Below are positions 1 to 5,280 of a DNA stretch of 5,280 nucleotides, one piece after another. Positions within the stretch are counted from its first letter, which is position 1, and each line of letters opens with the position of its first letter. A model generated the notes under the pieces. The model was not told the DNA's origin and searched no databases. It worked only from the letters and a program-made list of their open reading frames with translations. The position numbers and the translations under genes were made by a program. The DNA lies in the IMG/VR virus record IMGVR_UViG_3300005859_000204, positions 1 through 5,280 of that record, one strand, 5' to 3'.

Positions 1-672
1 TGTTTTCTCGTTTAATGAGTCAAGAGTTATCGGCGTATCACGTATAAAATTTTCATGAATTATACAATTTGGTCCGGCATAACGGAAAAGTCTTGGATGG
101 ACTTTCTTTACTTCATCTAACATTTTCCAAGCTAAAGTTCTAATTTCCCATTGAGATCTTGAGCAAAGTCTAAGTGCAAAAAAGTTATAAAGTTCTCTAG
201 CATTCATAGTAACTACAATGTTTGTATTTACGCCGTTTGGTAAGACGTAACGGGCGTCTTCTTCTGGAACTCCAGATTCCAAAAGTTTGAAATAGTAATT
301 GTAAGCATCTCTGTAAGCTTTGTCAACAATTTCTTTAGCTCTTTTTTCTGCTGGTGGAGGTATAATTGGCTGATAATATTCATCTATCGGTTTTGCAAAA
401 CGATAACTGAGTTGAGTATAAGACGCAATTCTATGTCTGACAAGCTGATGAGATGTAATTCTGGAAATCCCCTCAATTGAGAAAGTATACACGCTGTGTT
501 CTAGCACAGACCAATAACCGTGAATTATAGCATCTCTAATCCAAATCTCAATCTCTTCATCTGTCATTGTAGCCTCATGGTAATCCCAACCTTTTCTAGA
601 CCTACTCATTTTTGATGCAATAGCTATAACTCTTTCGCCGTCTTTTGTATAAGATACAAGTTCAACTTTCAT
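1..672 (-). CDS. thyX: Flavin-dependent thymidylate synthase ThyX (3' end beyond window edge)
   Basis: Hand translation from ATG at 672: [29 protein letters not shown]...[42 protein letters not shown]...[45 protein letters not shown]. It carries the ThyX RHR-x7-S-x-R motif plus [19 protein letters not shown] and QWEIR. The frame is open to base 1. Absent from the ORF track. Confidence 0.96.
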
Positions 673-675
673 TTT

Positions 676-864
676 CTACCACAACTTATCTCCTTTTTCA
701 ACTTTTATTTCTTGAACTCTTTCTTTCTTAAGTTCTTCTTGAAGAAATTTTTGTAAAGCTATTCTTATAACTTCAGATTTTGGCATTTTATGTTTTATGG
801 CATAAGCTTCCAACATCATCATTAGATCATCATCAGCTTTAAATGTAAATTGTCTAAGCACCAT
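676..864 (-). CDS. Ribbon-helix-helix (CopG-like) transcriptional regulator, positional equivalent of SIRV2 ORF59b/gp21
   Basis: RQFTFKAD ribbon, DLMMMLEAYAIKH helix and KSEVIRIALQKFL second helix. GGTGA Shine-Dalgarno at 874-870. Abuts the upstream stop and ends 3 nt before the thyX ATG. Confidence 0.88.
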   Translation of the reverse strand: MVLRQFTFKADDDLMMMLEAYAIKHKMPKSEVIRIALQKFLQEELKKERVQEIKVEKGDKLW

Positions 865-1143
865 TTAGATCACCAAATCTAATTTTTTAGTTGTAATCAT
901 TTTGCCTATTTTTATAGTTACTTCAAATTTGTTTTCTTTTAATGATTTATATATTCGAATTTCAAAATAGAAATGTCTATTTTTTATCTCTAAATATCCG
1001 CTTATCATTATTTTGCCTTTTGAATAGAAAAGTATTTCTGGTTTTTCAGAAAAAACAATTGTTTGATTTAAAATATTTTCTATTTCCTTTTTTCCAATTT
1101 TATTAATTGTATTTTCTATTTCTTGTAAATAACTTGATATCAT
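865..1143 (-). CDS. Small basic alpha/beta hypothetical viral protein (92 aa)
   Basis: ATG ORF with its own upstream TATA+TGTCATA element, tightly coupled to the downstream RHH gene. Predicted N-terminal helices and several C-terminal beta strands. Confidence 0.75.
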   Translation of the reverse strand: MISSYLQEIENTINKIGKKEIENILNQTIVFSEKPEILFYSKGKIMISGYLEIKNRHFYFEIRIYKSLKENKFEVTIKIGKMITTKKLDLVI

Positions 1144-1166: not shown

Positions 1167-1192
1167 TATGACAATTAAAAATATTTTTAATT
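1167..1192 (-). promoter_or_regulatory. Promoter (TATA-like box + TGTCATA box) for the ORF92-RHH-thyX operon
   Basis: Minus strand reads AATTAAAAATATTTTTAAT-TGTCATA, ending 23 nt before the ATG at 1143. Confidence 0.65.
1173..1192. repeat. Perfect 20-bp palindrome AATTAAAAATATTTTTAATT
   Basis: Read directly; equals its own reverse complement. Confidence 0.9.
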
Positions 1193-1217
1193 TTATGTTT
1201 TATCAGCTTAACAATTC

Positions 1218-1239
1218 ATATTCAAAATATTTTGAATAT
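1218..1239. repeat. Perfect 22-bp palindrome ATATTCAAAATATTTTGAATAT
   Basis: Read directly; lies immediately after the Cas4-like stop codon. Confidence 0.9.
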
Positions 1240-1880
1240 TATTTTTTCTCATTTGTTTGGAAATATTCGAAAAGTGAGCCAAAACATCTAGATTTGAATT
1301 CACAATTTTTACATAAATAATTGTTAACTCCAGGAATATTTTTATAGTCTGTCATTTTTAGATATTCTTTAAATTTTTTAATCCAATCTATAGCTTTTTG
1401 TAAATATTGGTCTATTATTTTCTTGTCAATTTGGAATTGTTTAACTTCCTTATTTATTCTATTCAAATATATAATATAGATATTATCAATTTTGAAATTC
1501 TGTTGTTGTAACAGATGATAATAGATAGCAATTTGGTAAAGATGATATTCTTTAATTTGAAAGTAATTAGTTGAGATAGTTTTAATTTCGAGCAAATCAT
1601 TTCCACAAATAAGGTCAGCTCTACCAGAGATTTTTAGACCTTCAATTTCACCTTTGACTTCAACTTCAGCTTGACAGCCTAATTTTTCAACGAAATAATT
1701 CTCAATTCTTTCATGATGAAGTTCGCCAAGATCTAGCACTAGCTCATTTATTCCTTTCTCGAATTCAAATTTCCTAGCAAAATATGACTTTCTAAAACAA
1801 ACTCCGACTTCAGATGGAAATATTGTATCCTCTGGATATTTGACTTTAAAACTTTGCCTAACTAGGTCTTCATAATTCAT
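1239..1880 (-). CDS. cas4: Cas4-like / RecB-family PD-(D/E)xK ssDNA nuclease with Fe-S cysteines (SIRV2 gp19/ORF207-like)
   Basis: N-terminal [10 protein letters not shown] Cys, GELHHE, GRADL, EIK, QIAIY (QxxxY) and C-terminal [17 protein letters not shown] at 1891-1887. Confidence 0.93.
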
Positions 1881-1882
1881 CT

Positions 1883-3190
1883 TTACTCACCAAGATTTGA
1901 GAACCTCATAAAGTTGTATATTTGATTGCAAATTTCTTCATTTTGTCTCTGTCCGATTTGCAAATCAATATCTAGAGCTTGCATCAATATTTGTATATCA
2001 ATTGCTTGTTCTTGTCTTCTAGATTCCAAATTATCACAAACTACATAATTTGTGATACTGTTTATCTTTTGCTGAATTAGGTCAATTAGAGCTTTTAAAA
2101 TGGAGGGATACAGAACTCTAGCGTTTATGATTTTATCATAAGTCTTTTTAATTGCAAGTTGTATAATATGAATTCTATCTAAAATTGCTGGAGTAAAAAT
2201 TTTGTAATTTAATAAATAATCTTCAATATCAAAAGCTGTTAATTTGTTAAGCGTATATGAATATGGATTTCCGGCGTAGATAATCGGGATGCATTTCTGA
2301 ATAGTTGCAGATTTTGATTCAGTTCCAGCACCTCTAGTCCAGACACAATTTTCTATACCGCTGGACAAAGTAGCGTTAATCGATCCCAGCTCTTTCGCAG
2401 AAGTCCCATCTTTCCAGTTCTGGATTTCGTCGAAAATGAGGCCGTTTGACAAAAACACTGAGCCATACATATTATTTCTGGCATCATAAACTAGATTTGC
2501 ATATGTTGGAGCTTCAGTATAATATCGGAAATTAAAAACTTCTTGCAAAATCATAAAAGTCGTAGTTTTTCCAGTTCCGCGGTTAGAAATTTCAATATAG
2601 TTAATTTGACGTTTTGTAATTGGGGATTTAAAGAGTGGGAATAGACGTGGTAGAAATAGAAATATATCTTCAGTTTCCATTTTTGTAACGTCATATCCGA
2701 AAGCTTGAAGTAGAAGAGCGTAGGTCTGATGTTCTTGATTTGCTAAGTCAAGAAGTTCTTTAGCAATTTCATAGTTATTCGGCGGTTCTATTGAATAAAT
2801 ATCCGCGATATACCAGCCATTAACACCTTTTCTAATTTTGACAAACATGTAAGAAGTCAGCAAGTTATAGAAATCTTCAGGATTATCAGCTATGCAGTGA
2901 GGGTCGAATTCGCCAACAAAACCGTTTTGAAATCTAGCTAAAACTGTATCGTTTTTAACTTTAAAATTAGTAATTTTAGAGATAAATTTAACTTCATTGT
3001 TAAAGAGTAGATAAGATTGAAAGTATTGCTGATCAATCCCGCGTTTGTATGCCTTAAGAATCTCAATTTTCTTTCTTTCTTCAATCTGTTTTTCGCCAAT
3101 TATAATGTTGAGAATCCTCTCATTATCTCTCGGATTGTAAAAAAAAGTGTGAGTTTTGACTTTATCCAAGAACTGAGCTGAACTGCTCAT
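1883..3190 (-). CDS. AAA+ ATPase, MCM/BrxL-like (SIRV2 gp18/ORF436-like ssDNA annealing ATPase / putative helicase)
   Basis: Walker [10 protein letters not shown], Walker B LIFDE, sensor-1 YAGN, Arg finger ILDR. 435 aa, located between the SSB and Cas4-like genes as in rudiviruses. Confidence 0.9.
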
Positions 3191-3206
3191 AAAAAAAATG
3201 ATGACT

Positions 3207-3221
3207 TATGACATTTTAAAA
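3207..3221 (-). promoter_or_regulatory. Putative internal promoter for the ATPase gene (TTTTAAAA + TGTCATA)
   Basis: Minus strand TTTTAAAA-TGTCATA overlaps the SSB stop codon. The TATA end is 23 nt from the ATG at 3190, the spacing expected for a leaderless mRNA. Confidence 0.55.
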
Positions 3222-3629
3222 TTCGTCTTCAACATTCTTCTTTGTCTGTTTTTTCTGTTGTTTTTCCTCTTTTTGACTAGACTTTTGACTTTGTTCTTCT
3301 CCTTCAAGCTCTAATTCTTCAACCTGAGGTGCTGAATTACCGCTTCTAGTAAACTTTACGTATTCATTCAGAAGATCAGCATATTTATCTAGGAAATCTG
3401 CAATCAGTCTCAAATCTTTAGCATCATTTGCAGTTATGCCGATCTGTTTCTTATAGTTATTCTGACTGTGCAGAGTCATTGAATATCTTATCGAATTTCC
3501 ATTCGGCACAGCGTTTAACTGAACCACTAATCTTTGCAGACCTTTAATTTTCAAGATTCTAGATACTGGCTTATTTTGTTCTTTAGCTTGTTTACCGAGG
3601 TCATCTATTATTTCCTTCAGGCTTGCCAT
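3216..3629 (-). CDS. Rudiviral single-stranded DNA-binding protein (SIRV2 gp17/ORF131-like)
   Basis: MASLKEIIDDLGKQAKEQNK start resembles recalled rudiviral ORF131 proteins. First gene of the conserved trio. Low-complexity E/Q/K tail ending VEDEF. GGGGG SD at 3639-3635. Confidence 0.85.
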   Translation of the reverse strand: MASLKEIIDDLGKQAKEQNKPVSRILKIKGLQRLVVQLNAVPNGNSIRYSMTLHSQNNYKKQIGITANDAKDLRLIADFLDKYADLLNEYVKFTRSGNSAPQVEELELEGEEQSQKSSQKEEKQQKKQTKKNVEDEF

Positions 3630-3656
3630 GTTTTCCCCCGAATTGAGAATTTGAAA

Positions 3657-3676
3657 TATGACAAATTTAAATATTC
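3657..3676 (-). promoter_or_regulatory. Promoter of the SSB-ATPase-Cas4 operon (TATTTAAA + TGTCATA)
   Basis: Minus strand GAATATTTAAATT-TGTCATA, ending 27 nt before the ATG at 3629. Confidence 0.7.
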
Positions 3677-3709
3677 ACAAATATATAAGTTAAGACATTT
3701 GAGAATTAA

Positions 3710-3727
3710 GAGATAGAAGAAAAAAAT
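3710..3727 (-). terminator. Oligo-T/pyrimidine-rich archaeal terminator after the RHH-like ORF
   Basis: Minus strand shows a T7 run followed by CTTCTATCTC directly after the stop at 3730. Confidence 0.5.
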
Positions 3728-3729
3728 AT

Positions 3730-4002
3730 TTAAATTAGATTTAAGAAGATTGAGCGGATTATTTTTACCGGCTTGAGATTATATTTTTCTGACAATTTTT
3801 GTAACTTCTCGTAATATAAATCATCTATTGTAAAAAATACACGTTCGTCGTAATTATCCATAATTTCGATTGGCTTAAATTCTTTTTCTCCATTTAAGAT
3901 TTTATCTATCTCTTTCTTAATTTCCTCTCGTTTTTGATAAAAAATATCTTTATATTTCCCCGGTATTCTTAATTCTATATACTTATTTCTTTGCCTTTTC
4001 AT
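3730..4002 (-). CDS. Putative DNA-binding protein with C-terminal RHH, possibly a tandem RHH (90 aa from ATG 4002; the track uses TTG 4020)
   Basis: RVFFTIDDLYYEKLQKLSEKYNLKPVKIIRSIF fits the RHH pattern. N-terminal YIELRIP plus helix may be a second unit. GAGG lies upstream of ATG 4002. Confidence 0.6.
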   Translation of the reverse strand: MKRQRNKYIELRIPGKYKDIFYQKREEIKKEIDKILNGEKEFKPIEIMDNYDERVFFTIDDLYYEKLQKLSEKYNLKPVKIIRSIFLNLI

Positions 4003-4025
4003 AATTTTATTTATCCTCAACCTTC

Positions 4026-4072
4026 ATTTAAACATGTCATATACATTTAAATGTCAGATTTTCATTTTGACA
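4026..4072 (+). promoter_or_regulatory. Divergent promoter region of rep with tandem TTTAAA/TGTCA units
   Basis: TTTAAACA-TGTCATA (box 4035-4041), TTTAAA-TGTCAGA (4052-4058) and inverted TGACA (4068-4072). Confidence 0.6.
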
Positions 4073-4073
4073 C

Positions 4074-4421
4074 ATGGATTGTAAAAAAGTTTTTAGCTAT
4101 CACTTTCTTTACAGTTACACTTATTTTGTAACTATTACCACAAATTATCGTTATAATTCCACGATTCCGATCTATAAAAAATTTAGACAATATGTGTATA
4201 ATCATGACTCATCAGCTCATATTTTTTCAGTTAAGGAATATACAACAAAATTCCACGGTCTTCATTATCATCTTCTAGTTTTCACGAATAAAAGACTTGA
4301 TTATTCCAAAGTTCATGAGAAAATGCCTCCGCATTCTGACATTCGAATTGAATTAGTTCCGAAAACAAAAAAAGATATAAAAAAAGTTTTGACTTATATG
4401 TTAAAAAATCAAATCACTTAG
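4074..4421 (+). CDS. rep: Stand-alone HUH endonuclease, rudiviral replication initiator Rep (SIRV1 ORF119 / SIRV2 gp16-like)
   Basis: RCR motif I FVTITT, motif II GLHYHLLVF and motif III YMLK. 115 aa with no helicase domain. Confidence 0.9.
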   Translation: MDCKKVFSYHFLYSYTYFVTITTNYRYNSTIPIYKKFRQYVYNHDSSAHIFSVKEYTTKFHGLHYHLLVFTNKRLDYSKVHEKMPPHSDIRIELVPKTKKDIKKVLTYMLKNQIT

Positions 4422-4707
4422 TTTGTTGTTGTAAATTTTGATATAACCAAATCTTTTTCTGAGCTAATGAATTTACATCTCCAAGAGTGTCCATGTTGAG
4501 AAGAGCATTAATTCCGAGTGTTGTCGTAGTCTTTATACTTTCAACTGCTGTAATAGTAGCTTTTGTCATTTGATCAACAGCTATTTGAAATGCTTGATTT
4601 GCTTGTTTTTGATTGTAAAGATGTACTATTTCGCCAACTACATAACTAGCTACTAGTACTGACATTAATACTAGAAATCCTTCTAAAAATTCTGTGAAGA
4701 TGTTCAT
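4414..4707 (-). CDS. Virus-associated pyramid protein PVAP (SIRV2 P98 / STIV C92 family), virion egress
   Basis: N-terminal transmembrane helix FLEGFLVLMSVLVASYVVGEIVHLYN, then DQM..T..A.ESIK.TT..GINALLNMDTL.DVNSLA, closely matching the recalled SIRV2 P98 sequence. 97 aa. Confidence 0.92.
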   Translation of the reverse strand: MNIFTEFLEGFLVLMSVLVASYVVGEIVHLYNQKQANQAFQIAVDQMTKATITAVESIKTTTTLGINALLNMDTLGDVNSLAQKKIWLYQNLQQQTK

Positions 4708-4742
4708 TTCAATTTCATATTAAACAAATTGCTTAGTAATAA

Positions 4743-4758
4743 ATTTTTTGCAAAAAAT
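4743..4758. repeat. Perfect 16-bp palindrome ATTTTTTGCAAAAAAT between the divergent PVAP and svtR promoters
   Basis: Read directly. Confidence 0.85.
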
Positions 4759-4780
4759 CGAAATATATAAATATGTCATA
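4752..4780 (+). promoter_or_regulatory. svtR promoter (A-rich BRE, TATATAAA, TGTCATA)
   Basis: AAAAAATCGAAA-TATATAAA-TA-TGTCATA, ending 25 nt before the ATG at 4806. Confidence 0.72.
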
Positions 4781-4805: not shown

Positions 4806-4967
4806 ATGGAAGCACAAGTTAAGAAAGAAAAAGTAGTTTTCGGTATAAACATGGACAAAGAGCTGAAGAAGAAATTGAAGGCTTATTGTGTAGAAAATGA
4901 CATAACTTTGACCGAGGCAATTGAAACAGCAATAAAAGAATATCTTCAGAAGAGGGGGGCATTATGA
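4806..4967 (+). CDS. svtR: SvtR-like RHH transcriptional repressor (53 aa)
   Basis: MEAQVKKEKVVFGINMDKELKKKLKAYCVENDITLTEAIETAIKEYLQKRGAL, very similar to recalled SIRV1 SvtR/ORF56b (VFGIxMDKxLK..LKxYC.....LT.AIE.AIKEYLQKR). Too short for the ORF track. Confidence 0.9.
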   Translation: MEAQVKKEKVVFGINMDKELKKKLKAYCVENDITLTEAIETAIKEYLQKRGAL

Positions 4968-5104
4968 GAACTGTGACCATAAAATTTGAAGAAGACCTTC
5001 TTAATGAGCTAGATGAATATGCAGAAACTCACGGACTTTATAGGTCAGATGTTGTAAGATTAGCAGTTAGAGAATTTCTAGCAAATAAGAAAAAAAGTTT
5101 ATAA
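4964..5104 (+). CDS. CopG-like RHH protein (46 aa)
   Basis: MRTVTIKFEEDLLNELDEYAETHGLYRSDVVRLAVREFLANKKKSL, a canonical RHH. ATGA overlap with the svtR stop and a G-rich SD at 4952-4959. Confidence 0.87.
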   Translation: MRTVTIKFEEDLLNELDEYAETHGLYRSDVVRLAVREFLANKKKSL

Positions 5105-5130
5105 CTTTAAGTTATTAATTTTTTTTCTTT
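5090..5130. terminator. Probable bidirectional terminator between the convergent RHH and dUTPase genes
   Basis: T run at 5119-5126 on the + strand, A run at 5090-5096 (T run on the - strand), with inverted repeat ATAACTT-T-AAGTTAT (5101-5115) between them. Confidence 0.5.
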
Positions 5131-5280
5131 CAACTTTTATAATTCTCAACAAATTTTGGTAATGTTACGCCATTTTGTTTCTGATATTTTCCGTGATATG
5201 GTCTCTCGACTGGAGTTATTGTTTTAGCGAAAATTAGATGTAGAAATCTTTGTCCACTTTTCAGTCTTACGGGGAATTCG
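5130..5280 (-). CDS. dut: dUTPase / dCTP deaminase family protein, C-terminal 49 aa (start outside window)
   Basis: ...[49 protein letters not shown]. The G.RFLHLIF and PY.GKYQ.Q.GVT motifs are typical of SIRV dUTPase and archaeal Dcd. Confidence 0.88.

What the first reader, a model, noticed from the sequence alone, without database searches (positions are those of the whole stretch)
1167..4780. Five exact TGTCATA boxes define a putative viral regulon
TGTCATA occurs at 1173-1167(-), 3213-3207(-), 3663-3657(-), 4035-4041(+) and 4774-4780(+). Every copy is intergenic, lies 0-2 nt behind a TATA-like box, is oriented with the downstream gene and ends 16-32 nt before its ATG. By eye I found no exact copy inside coding DNA, which is about 90% of the window. 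A 'GTC' element near rudiviral TATA boxes is already known; here it extends to an invariant 7-mer ahead of the DNA-metabolism and regulator genes. It is absent upstream of PVAP on that gene's strand. Inference: the site of a viral or host factor that sets a temporal class.
Basis: partly seen in the sequence, partly recalled or inferred. Interest (0 to 1): 0.65.

Follow-up and report, generated by a model that had tools for sequence, protein, structure and literature searches.

The report
Rudivirus post-TATA promoter box TGTCATA
The five TGTCATA boxes are real, strongly conserved promoter elements, but they are the full form of the known rudiviral 'GTC' box used by most of the virus's promoters, not the mark of a small DNA-metabolism regulon; related rudivirus genera carry a different word at the same spot.

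Summary
TGTCATA occurs exactly five times at the stated coordinates. Every copy is intergenic, abuts a TATA-like octamer, points at the downstream gene and ends 16-32 nt before its ATG (about 1 copy expected by chance).

The window is a complete 5,280-bp hot-spring metagenome contig of an unlisted rudivirus, about 75% identical to the Yellowstone SIRV4-11 group.

In complete relatives (SIRV1, SIRV2, SIRV7) the same word is the top promoter-zone 7-mer: 42 of 54 copies are promoter-like. It precedes about half of all genes, including glycosyltransferase, permease, transglycosylase, dUTPase and some Acr genes. It is therefore the consensus (Y-GTC-ATA, 55% exact) of the GTC element reported in 2004, and marks the main promoter type. 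Terminal early promoters, major structural-gene promoters and PVAP promoters lack it, so it does mark a promoter class.

Across 10-49 natural variants the GTCATA positions are 100% conserved in four boxes. The fifth box (4035-4041) is lineage-specific; the conserved Rep element is TGTCAGA at 4052-4058.

The word is absent from promoters of two Sulfolobaceae chromosomes and of SIFV, which shares the SIRV host. SBRV1 uses TGTAAGA and SRV uses TGTATTC at the same position. I found no description of this in the papers I could search.

The protein that reads the box is unknown.

The parts
1167..1173 (-). Box 1, TGTCATA. It drives the p92 / RHH(62 aa) / ThyX operon (genes 865-1143, 676-864, 1-672, all on the - strand). 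It ends 23 nt before the ATG at 1143.
   Evidence: The orthologous promoter carries TGTCATA in all 8 SIRV-type genomes. GTCATA is 100% conserved in 10 distinct rows.
1174..1181 (-). TATA-like octamer TTTTTAAT, directly upstream of box 1.
   Evidence: Sequence. Fits the octamer consensus T-W-T-A-A-A-W-A of 64 promoters.
3207..3213 (-). Box 2, TGTCATA. It drives the gp18-like ATPase (1883-3190) and the Cas4-like nuclease (1239-1880). It ends 16 nt before the ATG at 3190, which is leaderless geometry.
   Evidence: Relatives read CGTCATA in 6 of 8 genomes. SBRV1 has CGTAAGA and SRV has CGTATTC, at the same 16-nt distance. GTCATA is 100% conserved in 30 rows; the T at position 1 is conserved in 27%.
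3214..3221 (-). TATA octamer TTTTAAAA of the ATPase promoter. It overlaps the stop codon of the SSB gene.
   Evidence: Sequence. 100% conserved in 30 rows.
3657..3663 (-). Box 3, TGTCATA. It drives the gp17-like ssDNA-binding protein (3216-3629). It ends 27 nt before the ATG, leaving a short leader with a G-rich Shine-Dalgarno-like run.
   Evidence: All 7 positions are 100% conserved in 34 distinct rows. The orthologues read TGTAAGA in SBRV1 and TGTATTC in SRV.
3664..3671 (-). TATA octamer TTTAAATT of the SSB promoter.
   Evidence: Sequence and the conservation profile.
4035..4041 (+). Box 4, TGTCATA, 32 nt before the Rep ATG. It is a lineage-specific copy produced by a one-base flip of the quasi-palindrome TATG[T/A]CATA. 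Most relatives read TGACATA here, which puts the GTC on the minus strand facing p90.
   Evidence: The T at 4037 is shared by 3 of 43 rows; A occurs in 26 and C in 14. Function uncertain.
4052..4058 (+). Box 4b, TGTCAGA, preceded by ATTTAAA (4045-4051). It ends 15 nt before the Rep start at 4074.
   Evidence: GTC is 100% conserved and TGTCAG at least 91% in 44 rows; the last A is variable. SIRV7, 8, 10 and V3 read TGTCAGA, TGTCAGG or TGTCAAG; SIRV2, 1 and 3 read CGTCCTT or CGTCATT.
4074..4421 (+). Rep (ORF119c-like) gene.
   Evidence: Pfam 117-like_vir 7.8e-43 and REP_ORF2-G2P 6.9e-08.
4774..4780 (+). Box 5, TGTCATA. It drives the SvtR-like RHH (4806-4967) and the 46-aa RHH (4964-5104). It ends 25 nt before the ATG.
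   Evidence: TGTCATA is present in all 8 SIRV-type genomes, and SBRV1 reads TGTAAGA. This is the orthologue of SIRV1 promoter 56 studied by Kessler et al. 2006. The metagenome rows were selected on this stretch, so their invariance here is by construction.
4766..4773 (+). TATA octamer TATAAATA of the SvtR-like promoter.
   Evidence: Sequence.
4708..4765 (-). PVAP (4414-4707) promoter region. It has no GTC-type box.
   Evidence: the box is absent in the window and in SIRV7, 8, 10, V3, 2, 1, SRV and SSRV1.
4003..4034 (-). p90 (3730-4002) promoter region. It has a TATA-like TTTAAATG but no GTC-type box in this virus.

Best explanation
TGTCATA is the consensus form (Y-GTC-A-T-A) of the rudivirus-specific 'GTC' core-promoter element. 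It sits directly against the 3' edge of the 8-bp TATA box. By geometry this is about -23 to -17 from the transcription start, the stretch between the TATA box and the point where the DNA opens. It belongs to the main promoter type that drives most transcription units of SIRV-type rudiviruses; in this window those are five units covering replication, nucleotide metabolism and regulators.

Most likely it acts while the TBP/TFB/RNA-polymerase complex assembles on the promoter. A protein matched to the virus lineage would contact it in a sequence- and orientation-specific way, either TFB-like or as an accessory factor that stabilises TBP/TFB. This would raise or condition initiation from these promoters.

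Shown here: the cis-element, its fixed position and orientation, very strong purifying selection, wide use across gene classes, absence from cellular and SIFV promoters, and replacement by another word in other genera.

For: - **Copies in place.** 5 of 5 copies sit in promoter position.
- **Top word in relatives.** It is the top promoter-zone 7-mer in the window, SIRV7, SIRV2 and SIRV1, at 23-27x enrichment. It ranks 1 of 420 same-composition words, with 42 of 54 copies promoter-like against 6.4% for the word set overall.
- **Near-identical relative.** In the 95% relative L096, 7 of 10 copies are promoter-like, including two promoters beyond the window.
- **Orthologous conservation.** The box is invariant in 8 genomes for the p92, SSB and SvtR-like promoters.
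- **Selection.** GTCATA is 100% conserved, against 72.5% for other intergenic positions and 88.9% for second codon positions.
- **Geometry.** Among 64 promoters the distance to the start codon has one mode at 16-17 nt with no Shine-Dalgarno-like motif (0 of 31), and a second at 25-28 nt with one in 12 of 33. An octamer T-W-T-A-A-A-W-A lies immediately upstream, preceded by a purine-rich BRE-like stretch.
- **Virus-specific.** Promoter-like copies number 1 of 41 and 0 of 19 in two Sulfolobaceae chromosomes, and 1 of 15 in SIFV, which shares the SIRV host species.
- **Genus-specific words at the same place.** The same position and distances hold, including the orthologous ATPase, SSB and SvtR promoters.
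- **Literature.** GTC downstream of the TATA box occurs in the majority of SIRV1/2 promoters and is proposed to be a virus-specific cis element (PMC5569661; PMC1635249). SIRV1 promoter 56, the orthologue of box 5, is weak with TBP/TFB/RNAP alone and improves with host extract.
Against: - No transcription start, expression or binding data exist for this virus, so the -23..-17 placement rests on leaderless geometry.
- Host promoters show no preference at these positions. That is unexpected if host TFB itself had strong base preferences there.
- Promoters carrying the box are weak in a pure TBP/TFB/RNAP system. This argues against a simple basal enhancer and favours an accessory reader.
- The only pulled-down protein, Sta1, has a different proposed site.
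- The cellular genomes I used are stand-ins, not the confirmed host.
Confidence: 0.6

Rival explanations
1. The box is the operator of a dedicated viral or host regulator, and it defines a temporal regulon of DNA-metabolism and regulator genes.
For: - In the window it precedes exactly these genes and is absent from PVAP.
- In relatives it is absent from Aca8-type early promoters and from the MCP/fibre/PVAP promoters, so promoter classes exist.
- Genus-specific words suggest a co-evolving reader.
- Promoter 56 needs more than the basal factors.
Against: - In complete genomes it precedes 17-28 genes of many functions, including glycosyltransferases, permease, transglycosylase and Acr paralogues.
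- It is a single asymmetric 7-mer fixed against the TATA box, unlike operators of dimeric RHH or HTH regulators.
- The SvtR site is different.
- SIRV transcription is described as 'barely chronological'.
- The Gp1/Aca8 recognition helix does not track the word.
Confidence: 0.15
2. The box is read directly by host TFB, as an archaeal counterpart of the eukaryotic downstream TFIIB recognition element (BREd). Each virus genus has tuned it to its own host's TFB.
For: - Same place and length as BREd, -23 to -17 directly after the TATA box (geometry; BREd position from established knowledge, Deng and Roberts 2005).
- The asymmetric word fits an oriented contact.
- SSRV1 encodes its own TFB homologue, which shows that rudiviruses act at the TFB step.
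Against: - No signal at these positions in 600 kb of Sulfolobaceae promoters.
- SIFV, from the same host species, does not use it.
- The sequence does not fit the BREd consensus RTDKKKK.
- Promoter 56 is weak with purified TBP/TFB/RNAP, although those factors came from S. solfataricus.
Confidence: 0.2
3. The box is part of a site for the host activator Sta1 or another Lrs14-family protein.
For: Sta1 was pulled down by SIRV1 promoters 56, 134 and 399 but not by SSV1 T6, and it activates 56 and 134. One of its sites lies in the core promoter. A-TGT fits the ATNT half of the proposed consensus.
Against: - The strongest Sta1 target, promoter 134, has no GTC box on its own strand.
- The proposed 16-bp site ATNT-N8-WNAT needs conserved bases 8-12 nt further on, where the 64-promoter matrix shows none.
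- That consensus is too degenerate in 75% A+T DNA to be tested here.
Confidence: 0.08
4. There is no protein reader. The G:C-containing step after the TATA box only fixes the register or bendability of TBP on very A/T-rich DNA.
For: Y-G-T is common to the SIRV, SBRV1 and SRV words. TG/CA steps are flexible (general knowledge).
Against: Four further positions are conserved at 80-100% and switch together by genus. The equally A/T-rich SIFV and cellular promoters show no such clamp.
Confidence: 0.05
5. Chance or a compositional artefact.
For: The genome is A/T-rich and the word is short.
Against:: 0 of 200 shuffles reach 5 copies, rank 1 of 420, P about 7e-8, and 100% conservation.
Confidence: 0.01

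Closest known systems
Rudiviral 'GTC' element directly downstream of the TATA box (Kessler et al. 2004, as cited in PMC5569661 and PMC1635249)
   Same: Same virus family, same position after the TATA box, present in the majority of promoters, and described as virus-specific.
   Different: - It was described as a trinucleotide. Here it is a 7-bp consensus Y-GTC-ATA whose GTCATA is under stronger constraint than second codon positions.
- In SBRV1 and SRV the same slot holds TGTAAGA and TGTATTC, so only Y-G-T is shared.
- I could not read the 2004 paper, so I cannot exclude that its figures already show the longer consensus.
Eukaryotic downstream TFIIB recognition element, BREd (Deng and Roberts 2005; from established knowledge)
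   Same: A 7-bp element abutting the 3' side of the TATA box, at about -23 to -17. It is orientation-specific and modulates assembly of the initiation complex.
   Different: - A different consensus (RTDKKKK).
- No TFB contact is shown here.
- No equivalent signal in cellular Sulfolobaceae promoters.
- The word is virus-lineage-specific.
Aca8-associated early-gene regulatory sequence of SIRV2 and other archaeal viruses (PMC11065993)
   Same: A virus-specific conserved sequence around the core promoter that marks a class of genes. It was found in the same genera: Ice-, Usa-, Azo- and Japarudivirus.
   Different: That sequence is 30 bp or longer and is centred on a strong BRE plus TTTAWATA. It is confined to terminal anti-defence genes, and in my alignments it lacks the GTC box. 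It is a different promoter type.
Sta1 binding site ATNT-N8-WNAT (PMC1635249) and the TACATTATATAATGTA-like palindrome I see at structural-gene promoters
   Same: Cis-elements at SIRV core promoters that make them depend on a factor beyond TBP/TFB.
   Different: They are palindromic and 16 bp long, and they lie over or upstream of the TATA box at MCP, ORF399 and ORF564-type promoters. They are not the asymmetric post-TATA 7-mer.

Membership tests
Rudiviral post-TATA GTC promoter element | GTC immediately downstream of a TATA-like box, on the strand of the downstream gene | tested here: met
   5 of 5 exact boxes plus TGTCAGA at 4052-4058. Each follows an A/T-rich octamer at 0 nt.
Rudiviral post-TATA GTC promoter element | Present in the majority of the virus's promoters | tested here: met
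   In the window, 5 of 7 promoter regions carry it. SIRV2, SIRV7 and SIRV1 have 23, 28 and 17 genes with a GTC-type promoter. L096 has 7.
Rudiviral post-TATA GTC promoter element | Virus-specific, not a feature of host promoters | tested here: met
   Promoter-like copies are 1 of 41 and 0 of 19 in two Sulfolobaceae chromosomes and 1 of 15 in SIFV. The cellular genomes are stand-ins for the unknown host.
Rudiviral post-TATA GTC promoter element | Contributes to transcription efficiency | not testable with these tools
   This needs mutagenesis and in vitro or in vivo transcription. There are no RNA data for this virus.
BREd-type TFB/TFIIB downstream recognition element | Located at about -23 to -17 from the transcription start | tested here: inconclusive
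   The leaderless geometry fits: the distance mode is 16-17 nt to the start codon with no Shine-Dalgarno-like motif. No start site has been measured.
BREd-type TFB/TFIIB downstream recognition element | Matches the consensus RTDKKKK | tested here: not met
   TGTCATA differs at most positions. This is a direct comparison against a consensus taken from established knowledge.
BREd-type TFB/TFIIB downstream recognition element | Direct contact by TFB | not testable with these tools
   This needs footprinting or crosslinking.
Operator of a gene-specific regulator (regulon) | Restricted to a functionally coherent subset of genes | tested here: not met
   In SIRV1, 2 and 7 it precedes replication, nucleotide-metabolism, regulator, glycosyltransferase, permease, Acr-paralogue and unknown genes.
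Operator of a gene-specific regulator (regulon) | Repeat or palindromic architecture typical of RHH/HTH dimers | tested here: not met
   It is a single asymmetric 7-mer. The flanks are unconserved beyond position +7.
Aca8-type early-gene regulatory sequence | Strong purine BRE (GAAAG) plus TTTAWATA inside a conserved block of 30 bp or more | tested here: not met
   None of the window's promoters matches. Type A promoters in SIRV1, 2 and 7 lack the GTC box.

The most novel reading that the evidence does not exclude
Rudivirus genera each speak their own 'promoter dialect'. The 7-bp slot after the TATA box keeps Y-G-T, but its last four bases have switched in concert across a dozen or more promoters per genome: CATA in Ice-/Usarudivirus and this contig, AAGA in SBRV1, ATTC in SRV. 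Orthologous promoters are included. This implies a lineage-matched protein reader acting at initiation-complex assembly.
Probability: 0.35. Interest if true: 0.7.

Novelty: new variant of a known kind. Interest (0 to 1): 0.45.

Why it matters
Archaeal viruses rely wholly on the host RNA polymerase. How they direct it to their own genes has been unclear since the GTC element was noted in 2004.

This work shows four things:
- The element is a 7-bp box at a fixed place.
- Its core is conserved more strongly than second codon positions.
- It is absent from cellular promoters and from another virus of the same host.
- It is replaced wholesale in sister genera.

Together these turn the question 'what reads it?' into a clean experiment: swap the four variable bases, or pull down with the two dialects.

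The box also has practical uses:
- It is a good predictor of promoters and of missed genes in rudivirus contigs. It flags an unannotated conserved ORF in SIRV1 and SIRV2.
- It helps sort metagenomic rudivirus fragments by lineage.

Tried and rejected
- **Rest of the genome.** The held genome is only the window. An exact probe found nothing in IMG/VR. The window equals the whole JGI contig Ga0080003_1004213. The genome-wide test therefore had to use relatives and the 95% relative L096.
- **Transcript starts from reads.** Only one DNA metagenome run holds the window and there is no RNA run. I did not use read laying, because contigs of a DNA run cannot show starts.
- **Key primary papers not held.** These were Kessler 2004, Quax 2013, Guilliere 2009 and Vestergaard 2008. 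What I say about them comes from citing papers or is marked as recollection.
- **Uninformative literature searches.** A full-text search for the bare word was useless. Searches for rudivirus plus GTC/TATA, or for the SBRV1/SRV words, found no description.
- **L009 and L010.** These virus-sized contigs in genome bins share only thyX with the window.
- **IMG/VR scans for the SBRV1 and SRV words.** The scans for TATA+TGTAAGA and TATA+TGTATTC gave only scattered single chance hits, so these two words rest on one genome each.
It is the only DNA-binding protein confined to the heptamer-bearing genera. However, its recognition helix does not co-vary with the word, and it binds DNA non-specifically in vitro. 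This is weak evidence against it.
- **Sta1 consensus in register with the box.** The position matrix does not support it.
- **Base frequencies anchored on TATA octamers.** These were too noisy because the register is ambiguous.
- **Tools and rules.** I did not use the sigma-70 promoter scan, structure prediction or the large protein searches, because they do not bear on this question. I used no alternative genetic code.

Full report
**What the window is.** The window is 5,280 bases with 30% G+C. It is identical to a complete JGI hot-spring metagenome contig, Ga0080003_1004213 (L091). No larger genome is held. Its nearest records are the Yellowstone Sulfolobus islandicus rod-shaped viruses SIRV4-11 (Usarudivirus) at about 75% identity, then SIRV1, 2 and 3 at about 71%.

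**Genes.**
- ThyX, 1-672(-).
- A 62-aa CopG-like RHH, 676-864(-).
- A 92-aa conserved rudiviral protein, 865-1143(-).
- A Cas4-like nuclease, 1239-1880(-).
- The gp18-like ATPase, 1883-3190(-).
- The gp17-like ssDNA-binding protein, 3216-3629(-).
- A 90-aa unknown, 3730-4002(-).
- Rep (ORF119c-like), 4074-4421(+).
- PVAP, 4414-4707(-).
- An SvtR-like RHH, 4806-4967(+).
- A 46-aa RHH, 4964-5104(+).
- The end of a dUTPase gene, 5130-5279(-).

I find three RHH proteins, not four.

**Check of the observation.** TGTCATA occurs exactly five times at the stated coordinates. Shuffles give a mean of 1.01 and never reach five. All five copies are intergenic and point at the downstream gene. Each directly follows an A/T-rich octamer and ends 23, 16, 27, 32 and 25 nt before the ATG. 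With promoter zones covering 3.7% of strand positions, five of five there has P of about 7e-8. There is no exact copy in coding DNA, and the PVAP promoter lacks the box.

**Is the box special to these genes?** No. I ran an unbiased count of 7-mers in the -50 to -9 zones of annotated genes. TGTCATA is the most enriched non-A/T word in SIRV7 (14 zones, 27x), SIRV2 (12 zones, 24x) and SIRV1 (10 zones, 23x).

Among all 420 words of the same composition it ranks first. 42 of its 54 copies in these three genomes are promoter-like, meaning an A/T octamer lies before the word and an ORF start lies 8-45 nt after it. The figure for the word set as a whole is 6.4%.

The genes it precedes include Rep, SSB, ATPase, dUTPase and SvtR. 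They also include tRNA-guanine transglycosylase, the amino-acid permease, glycosyltransferases, AcrID1 paralogues and many unknowns. In L096, a 10,958-bp contig 95% identical to the window, 7 of 10 copies are promoter-like. These include the dUTPase promoter and a 66-aa ORF beyond the window.

This agrees with the literature. [quoted passage not shown] 2004; also PMC1635249).

**Is the extension from GTC to seven bases real?** Yes, as a consensus. I anchored only on an A/T-rich octamer + N + GTC, which gave 74 sites. Position 1 is T in 86%, position 5 A in 89%, position 6 T in 80% and position 7 A in 80%. The exact 7-mer makes up 55% of sites. The main variants are TGTCAGA, CGTCATA, TGTCATG and TGTCTTA. 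So the box is not invariant.

**Conservation.** Two collection scans returned about 55 related contigs. After removing duplicates, 51 distinct sequences align to the window.
- In boxes 1, 2 and 3 the GTCATA positions are 100% conserved, across 10, 30 and 34 rows respectively.
- Other intergenic positions average 72.5%.
- Codon positions 1, 2 and 3 average 81.0%, 88.9% and 61.4%.
- Box 5 was the probe, so its invariance is by construction. It is nonetheless also invariant in the 8 independently obtained SIRV-type genomes.

Box 4 (4035-4041) is the exception. Its third base is T in only 3 of 43 rows, with A in 26 and C in 14. Most relatives read TGACATA there, which puts the GTC on the opposite strand, facing p90. 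The 9-mer TATG[T/A]CATA is a quasi-palindrome, so one central substitution flips the strand that carries the box.

The conserved Rep element is the neighbouring TGTCAGA at 4052-4058. It is preceded by ATTTAAA and lies 15 nt before the start. Its GTC is 100% conserved and TGTCAG at least 91% in 44 rows.

**Geometry.** I collected 64 promoters from the window, SIRV7, SIRV2 and SIRV1.
- The eight bases before the box read T-W-T-A-A-A-W-A, which is the Sulfolobus TATA consensus. A purine-rich BRE-like stretch lies before that.
- No position after +7 is conserved.
- The distance from the box to the start codon is bimodal. One mode is at 16-17 nt with no Shine-Dalgarno-like motif (0 of 31). The other is at 25-28 nt, with such a motif in 12 of 33.

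Sulfolobales commonly use leaderless mRNAs (established knowledge). On that basis the first mode puts the start about 16-17 nt after the box. The box then lies at about -23 to -17 and the TATA octamer at about -31 to -24. This step is an inference, because no start site was measured.

**Promoter types.** In SIRV1, 2 and 7 I can tell three types apart.
- **Type B:** TATA plus the GTC box. This covers 17-28 genes per genome.
- **Type A:** GAAAG-type BRE plus TTTAWATA without GTC, found at the terminal small genes. It matches the Aca8-associated early-gene sequence of PMC11065993.
- **Palindrome type:** a set with a TACATTATATAATGTA-like palindrome, found at MCP, ORF399, ORF564-type and a few other genes. 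It probably relates to the 16-bp Sta1 sites.

PVAP promoters fit none of these. So the box does mark a class, the largest one. A link to timing is possible but untested. SIRV transcription has been called 'rather simple and barely chronological'.

**Virus-specific or host-general?** I applied the same annotation-free pipeline that recovers the box in SIRV2 and SIRV7.
- In 400 kb of a Sulfolobaceae chromosome (35.8% G+C, 402 called genes), TGTCATA falls in 1 promoter zone against 0.74 expected. No 7-mer there is enriched more than 6.6x.
- Promoter-like copies number 1 of 41 in that chromosome and 0 of 19 in 200 kb of a second genome.
- The composite TATA+box with up to one mismatch is as rare as its reversed control in five cellular genomes.
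- SIFV is a lipothrixvirus of the same host species as the SIRVs. It has 15 copies, none in a promoter zone against 0.46 expected, and 1 of 15 promoter-like by the looser context criterion. It has no dominant post-TATA word.

The element is therefore a trait of the rudivirus lineage. It is not dictated in any simple way by the host. The cellular genomes are stand-ins, because the host of this contig is unknown.

**Other genera use other words.** This is the part I did not expect.
- In SBRV1 (Japarudivirus) the top promoter word is TGTAAGA: 11 of 24 copies are promoter-like, and it ranks 1 of 210 permutations.
- In SRV (Azorudivirus) it is TGTATTC: 5 of 10 promoter-like, rank 1 of 210.
- Both abut TTTAAATA-type boxes at the same distances to the start codon.
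- The usage matrix is almost diagonal. TGTCATA scores 13-15 per SIRV genome and 0 in SBRV1 and SRV; the other two words behave the same way in reverse.

Orthologous promoters show the switch directly.
- The SSB promoter reads TGTCATA in 8 SIRV-type genomes, TGTAAGA in SBRV1 and TGTATTC in SRV.
- The ATPase promoter keeps TTTTAAA and the 16-nt distance, but reads C/TGTCATA, CGTAAGA and CGTATTC respectively.
- The SvtR-like promoter reads TGTCATA against TGTAAGA.

Only Y-G-T is common to all three words. ARV1 keeps GTC without an extension. SSRV1 has a weak ATGTAG. SMRV1 has a different word, TAGTACA, upstream of the TATA box. I found no description of this in the searchable library. I could not read the 2004, 2008 and 2019 genome papers. 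SBRV1 and SRV are single genomes.

**Who reads it?** This is unresolved.
- A concerted change of four bases across many promoters implies a reader whose specificity differs between lineages.
- Host TFB in a BREd-like contact fits the position. It does not fit the silence of cellular promoters or of SIFV.
- Kessler et al. 2006 report that SIRV1 promoter 56, the orthologue of box 5, is weak with S. solfataricus TBP/TFB/RNAP and improves with uninfected S. islandicus extract. Only Sta1 was pulled down, from infected and uninfected cells alike. This favours a host accessory factor or host-species-matched basal factors.
- Sta1's proposed site does not align with the box.
- A phyletic screen finds three SIRV2 proteins shared by SIRV7, SBRV1 and SRV but not by ARV1, SSRV1 or SMRV1: Gp1/Aca8, the transglycosylase and dUTPase. 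Gp1 is the only DNA binder among them. Its recognition helix does not co-vary with the word, and it binds DNA non-specifically in vitro.
- From memory, and unverified here, the 2004 paper reported that mutating GTC lowered transcription in a host-derived system.

**Verdict.** The five boxes are real promoter elements. The interpretation as a regulon is only partly right. They are the full-length form of the known rudiviral GTC element and mark the general-purpose promoter type of this virus group.

The new points are:
- the 7-bp definition, with its extreme conservation;
- the mis-assigned Rep copy;
- the genus-specific replacement of the word.

The last of these makes the twenty-year-old question of what reads the element directly testable.

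I used no alternative genetic code, and read laying and the large protein searches were not needed.

Noticed in passing
window 4052-4058 (+), with ATTTAAA at 4045-4051: A second, inexact box, TGTCAGA, lies 15 nt before the Rep start and 10 nt after the exact copy at 4035-4041. This makes a tandem TATA+box arrangement. This copy is the conserved one (GTC 100% in 44 rows), not the exact one.
   Followed up: yes
window 4033-4041: TATG[T/A]CATA is a quasi-palindrome, so a single central substitution moves the GTC box from one strand to the other. The window, L096, L102 and SIRV3 carry it on the Rep strand. Most relatives carry it on the p90 strand.
   Followed up: partly
L002 (SIRV2) 16360-16366 (+); L003 (SIRV1) 12893-12899 (+): 'Orphan' TATA+TGTCATA boxes with no annotated gene downstream sit 27 nt before a conserved, unannotated ORF of at least 42 codons (starting MKIKITCEKL... 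in SIRV2 and MKVKIICEKL... in SIRV1). The box predicts a missed gene.
   Followed up: partly
L002 (SIRV2), L001 (SIRV7) and L003 (SIRV1): upstream of the MCP, ORF399, ORF564-type and ORF268/269-type genes: A 16-bp palindrome, TACATTATATAATGTA with 0-2 mismatches, lies 28-53 nt before the start of structural and a few other genes. In some cases it sits upstream of a GTC-type core promoter. It probably relates to the 16-bp Sta1 sites footprinted on promoter 134.
   Followed up: partly
L008 (SSRV1) 21908-22720 (-): SSRV1 is annotated as encoding its own transcription factor B homologue (270 aa). So some rudiviruses act directly on the TFB step. SSRV1 lacks a strong post-TATA word.
   Followed up: no
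L007 (SMRV1): upstream of the genes at 6005, 16594, 19413 and 24192: SMRV1 has a different recurrent word, TAGTACA. It lies upstream of the TATA box at a fixed 33-34 nt from the start codon (4 exact copies of 6 in the genome).
   Followed up: no
window 1-1143 (-); L009-L022: ThyX is co-transcribed with a 92-aa protein and an RHH from box 1. SIRV7 and SIRV2 have no thyX at this place. The ThyX protein is 84-85% identical to homologues on Sulfolobaceae, Acidianus and Stygiolobus contigs, which suggests recent virus-host exchange. Several metagenomic relatives (L096, L097, L101, L082, L102, L093) also align over the thyX part of the window.
   Followed up: partly
L009 (JAWDOK010000013.1, 36,201-bp contig binned with Acidianus hospitalis): This is a virus-sized contig inside a MAG bin that carries a thyX 85% identical to the window's. 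It shares nothing else with the window, and I did not determine what it is.
   Followed up: no
L006 (SBRV1) about 350-400 and 33620-33680 (terminal repeats): The SBRV1 termini hold tandem TGTAAGT/TGTAAG repeats, near-copies of that virus's promoter word, upstream of the terminal small ORFs.
   Followed up: no
window 3214-3221 (-): The TATA octamer of the ATPase promoter overlaps the stop codon of the SSB gene. The whole internal promoter is packed into a 25-nt gap and is fully conserved in 30 relatives.
   Followed up: yes
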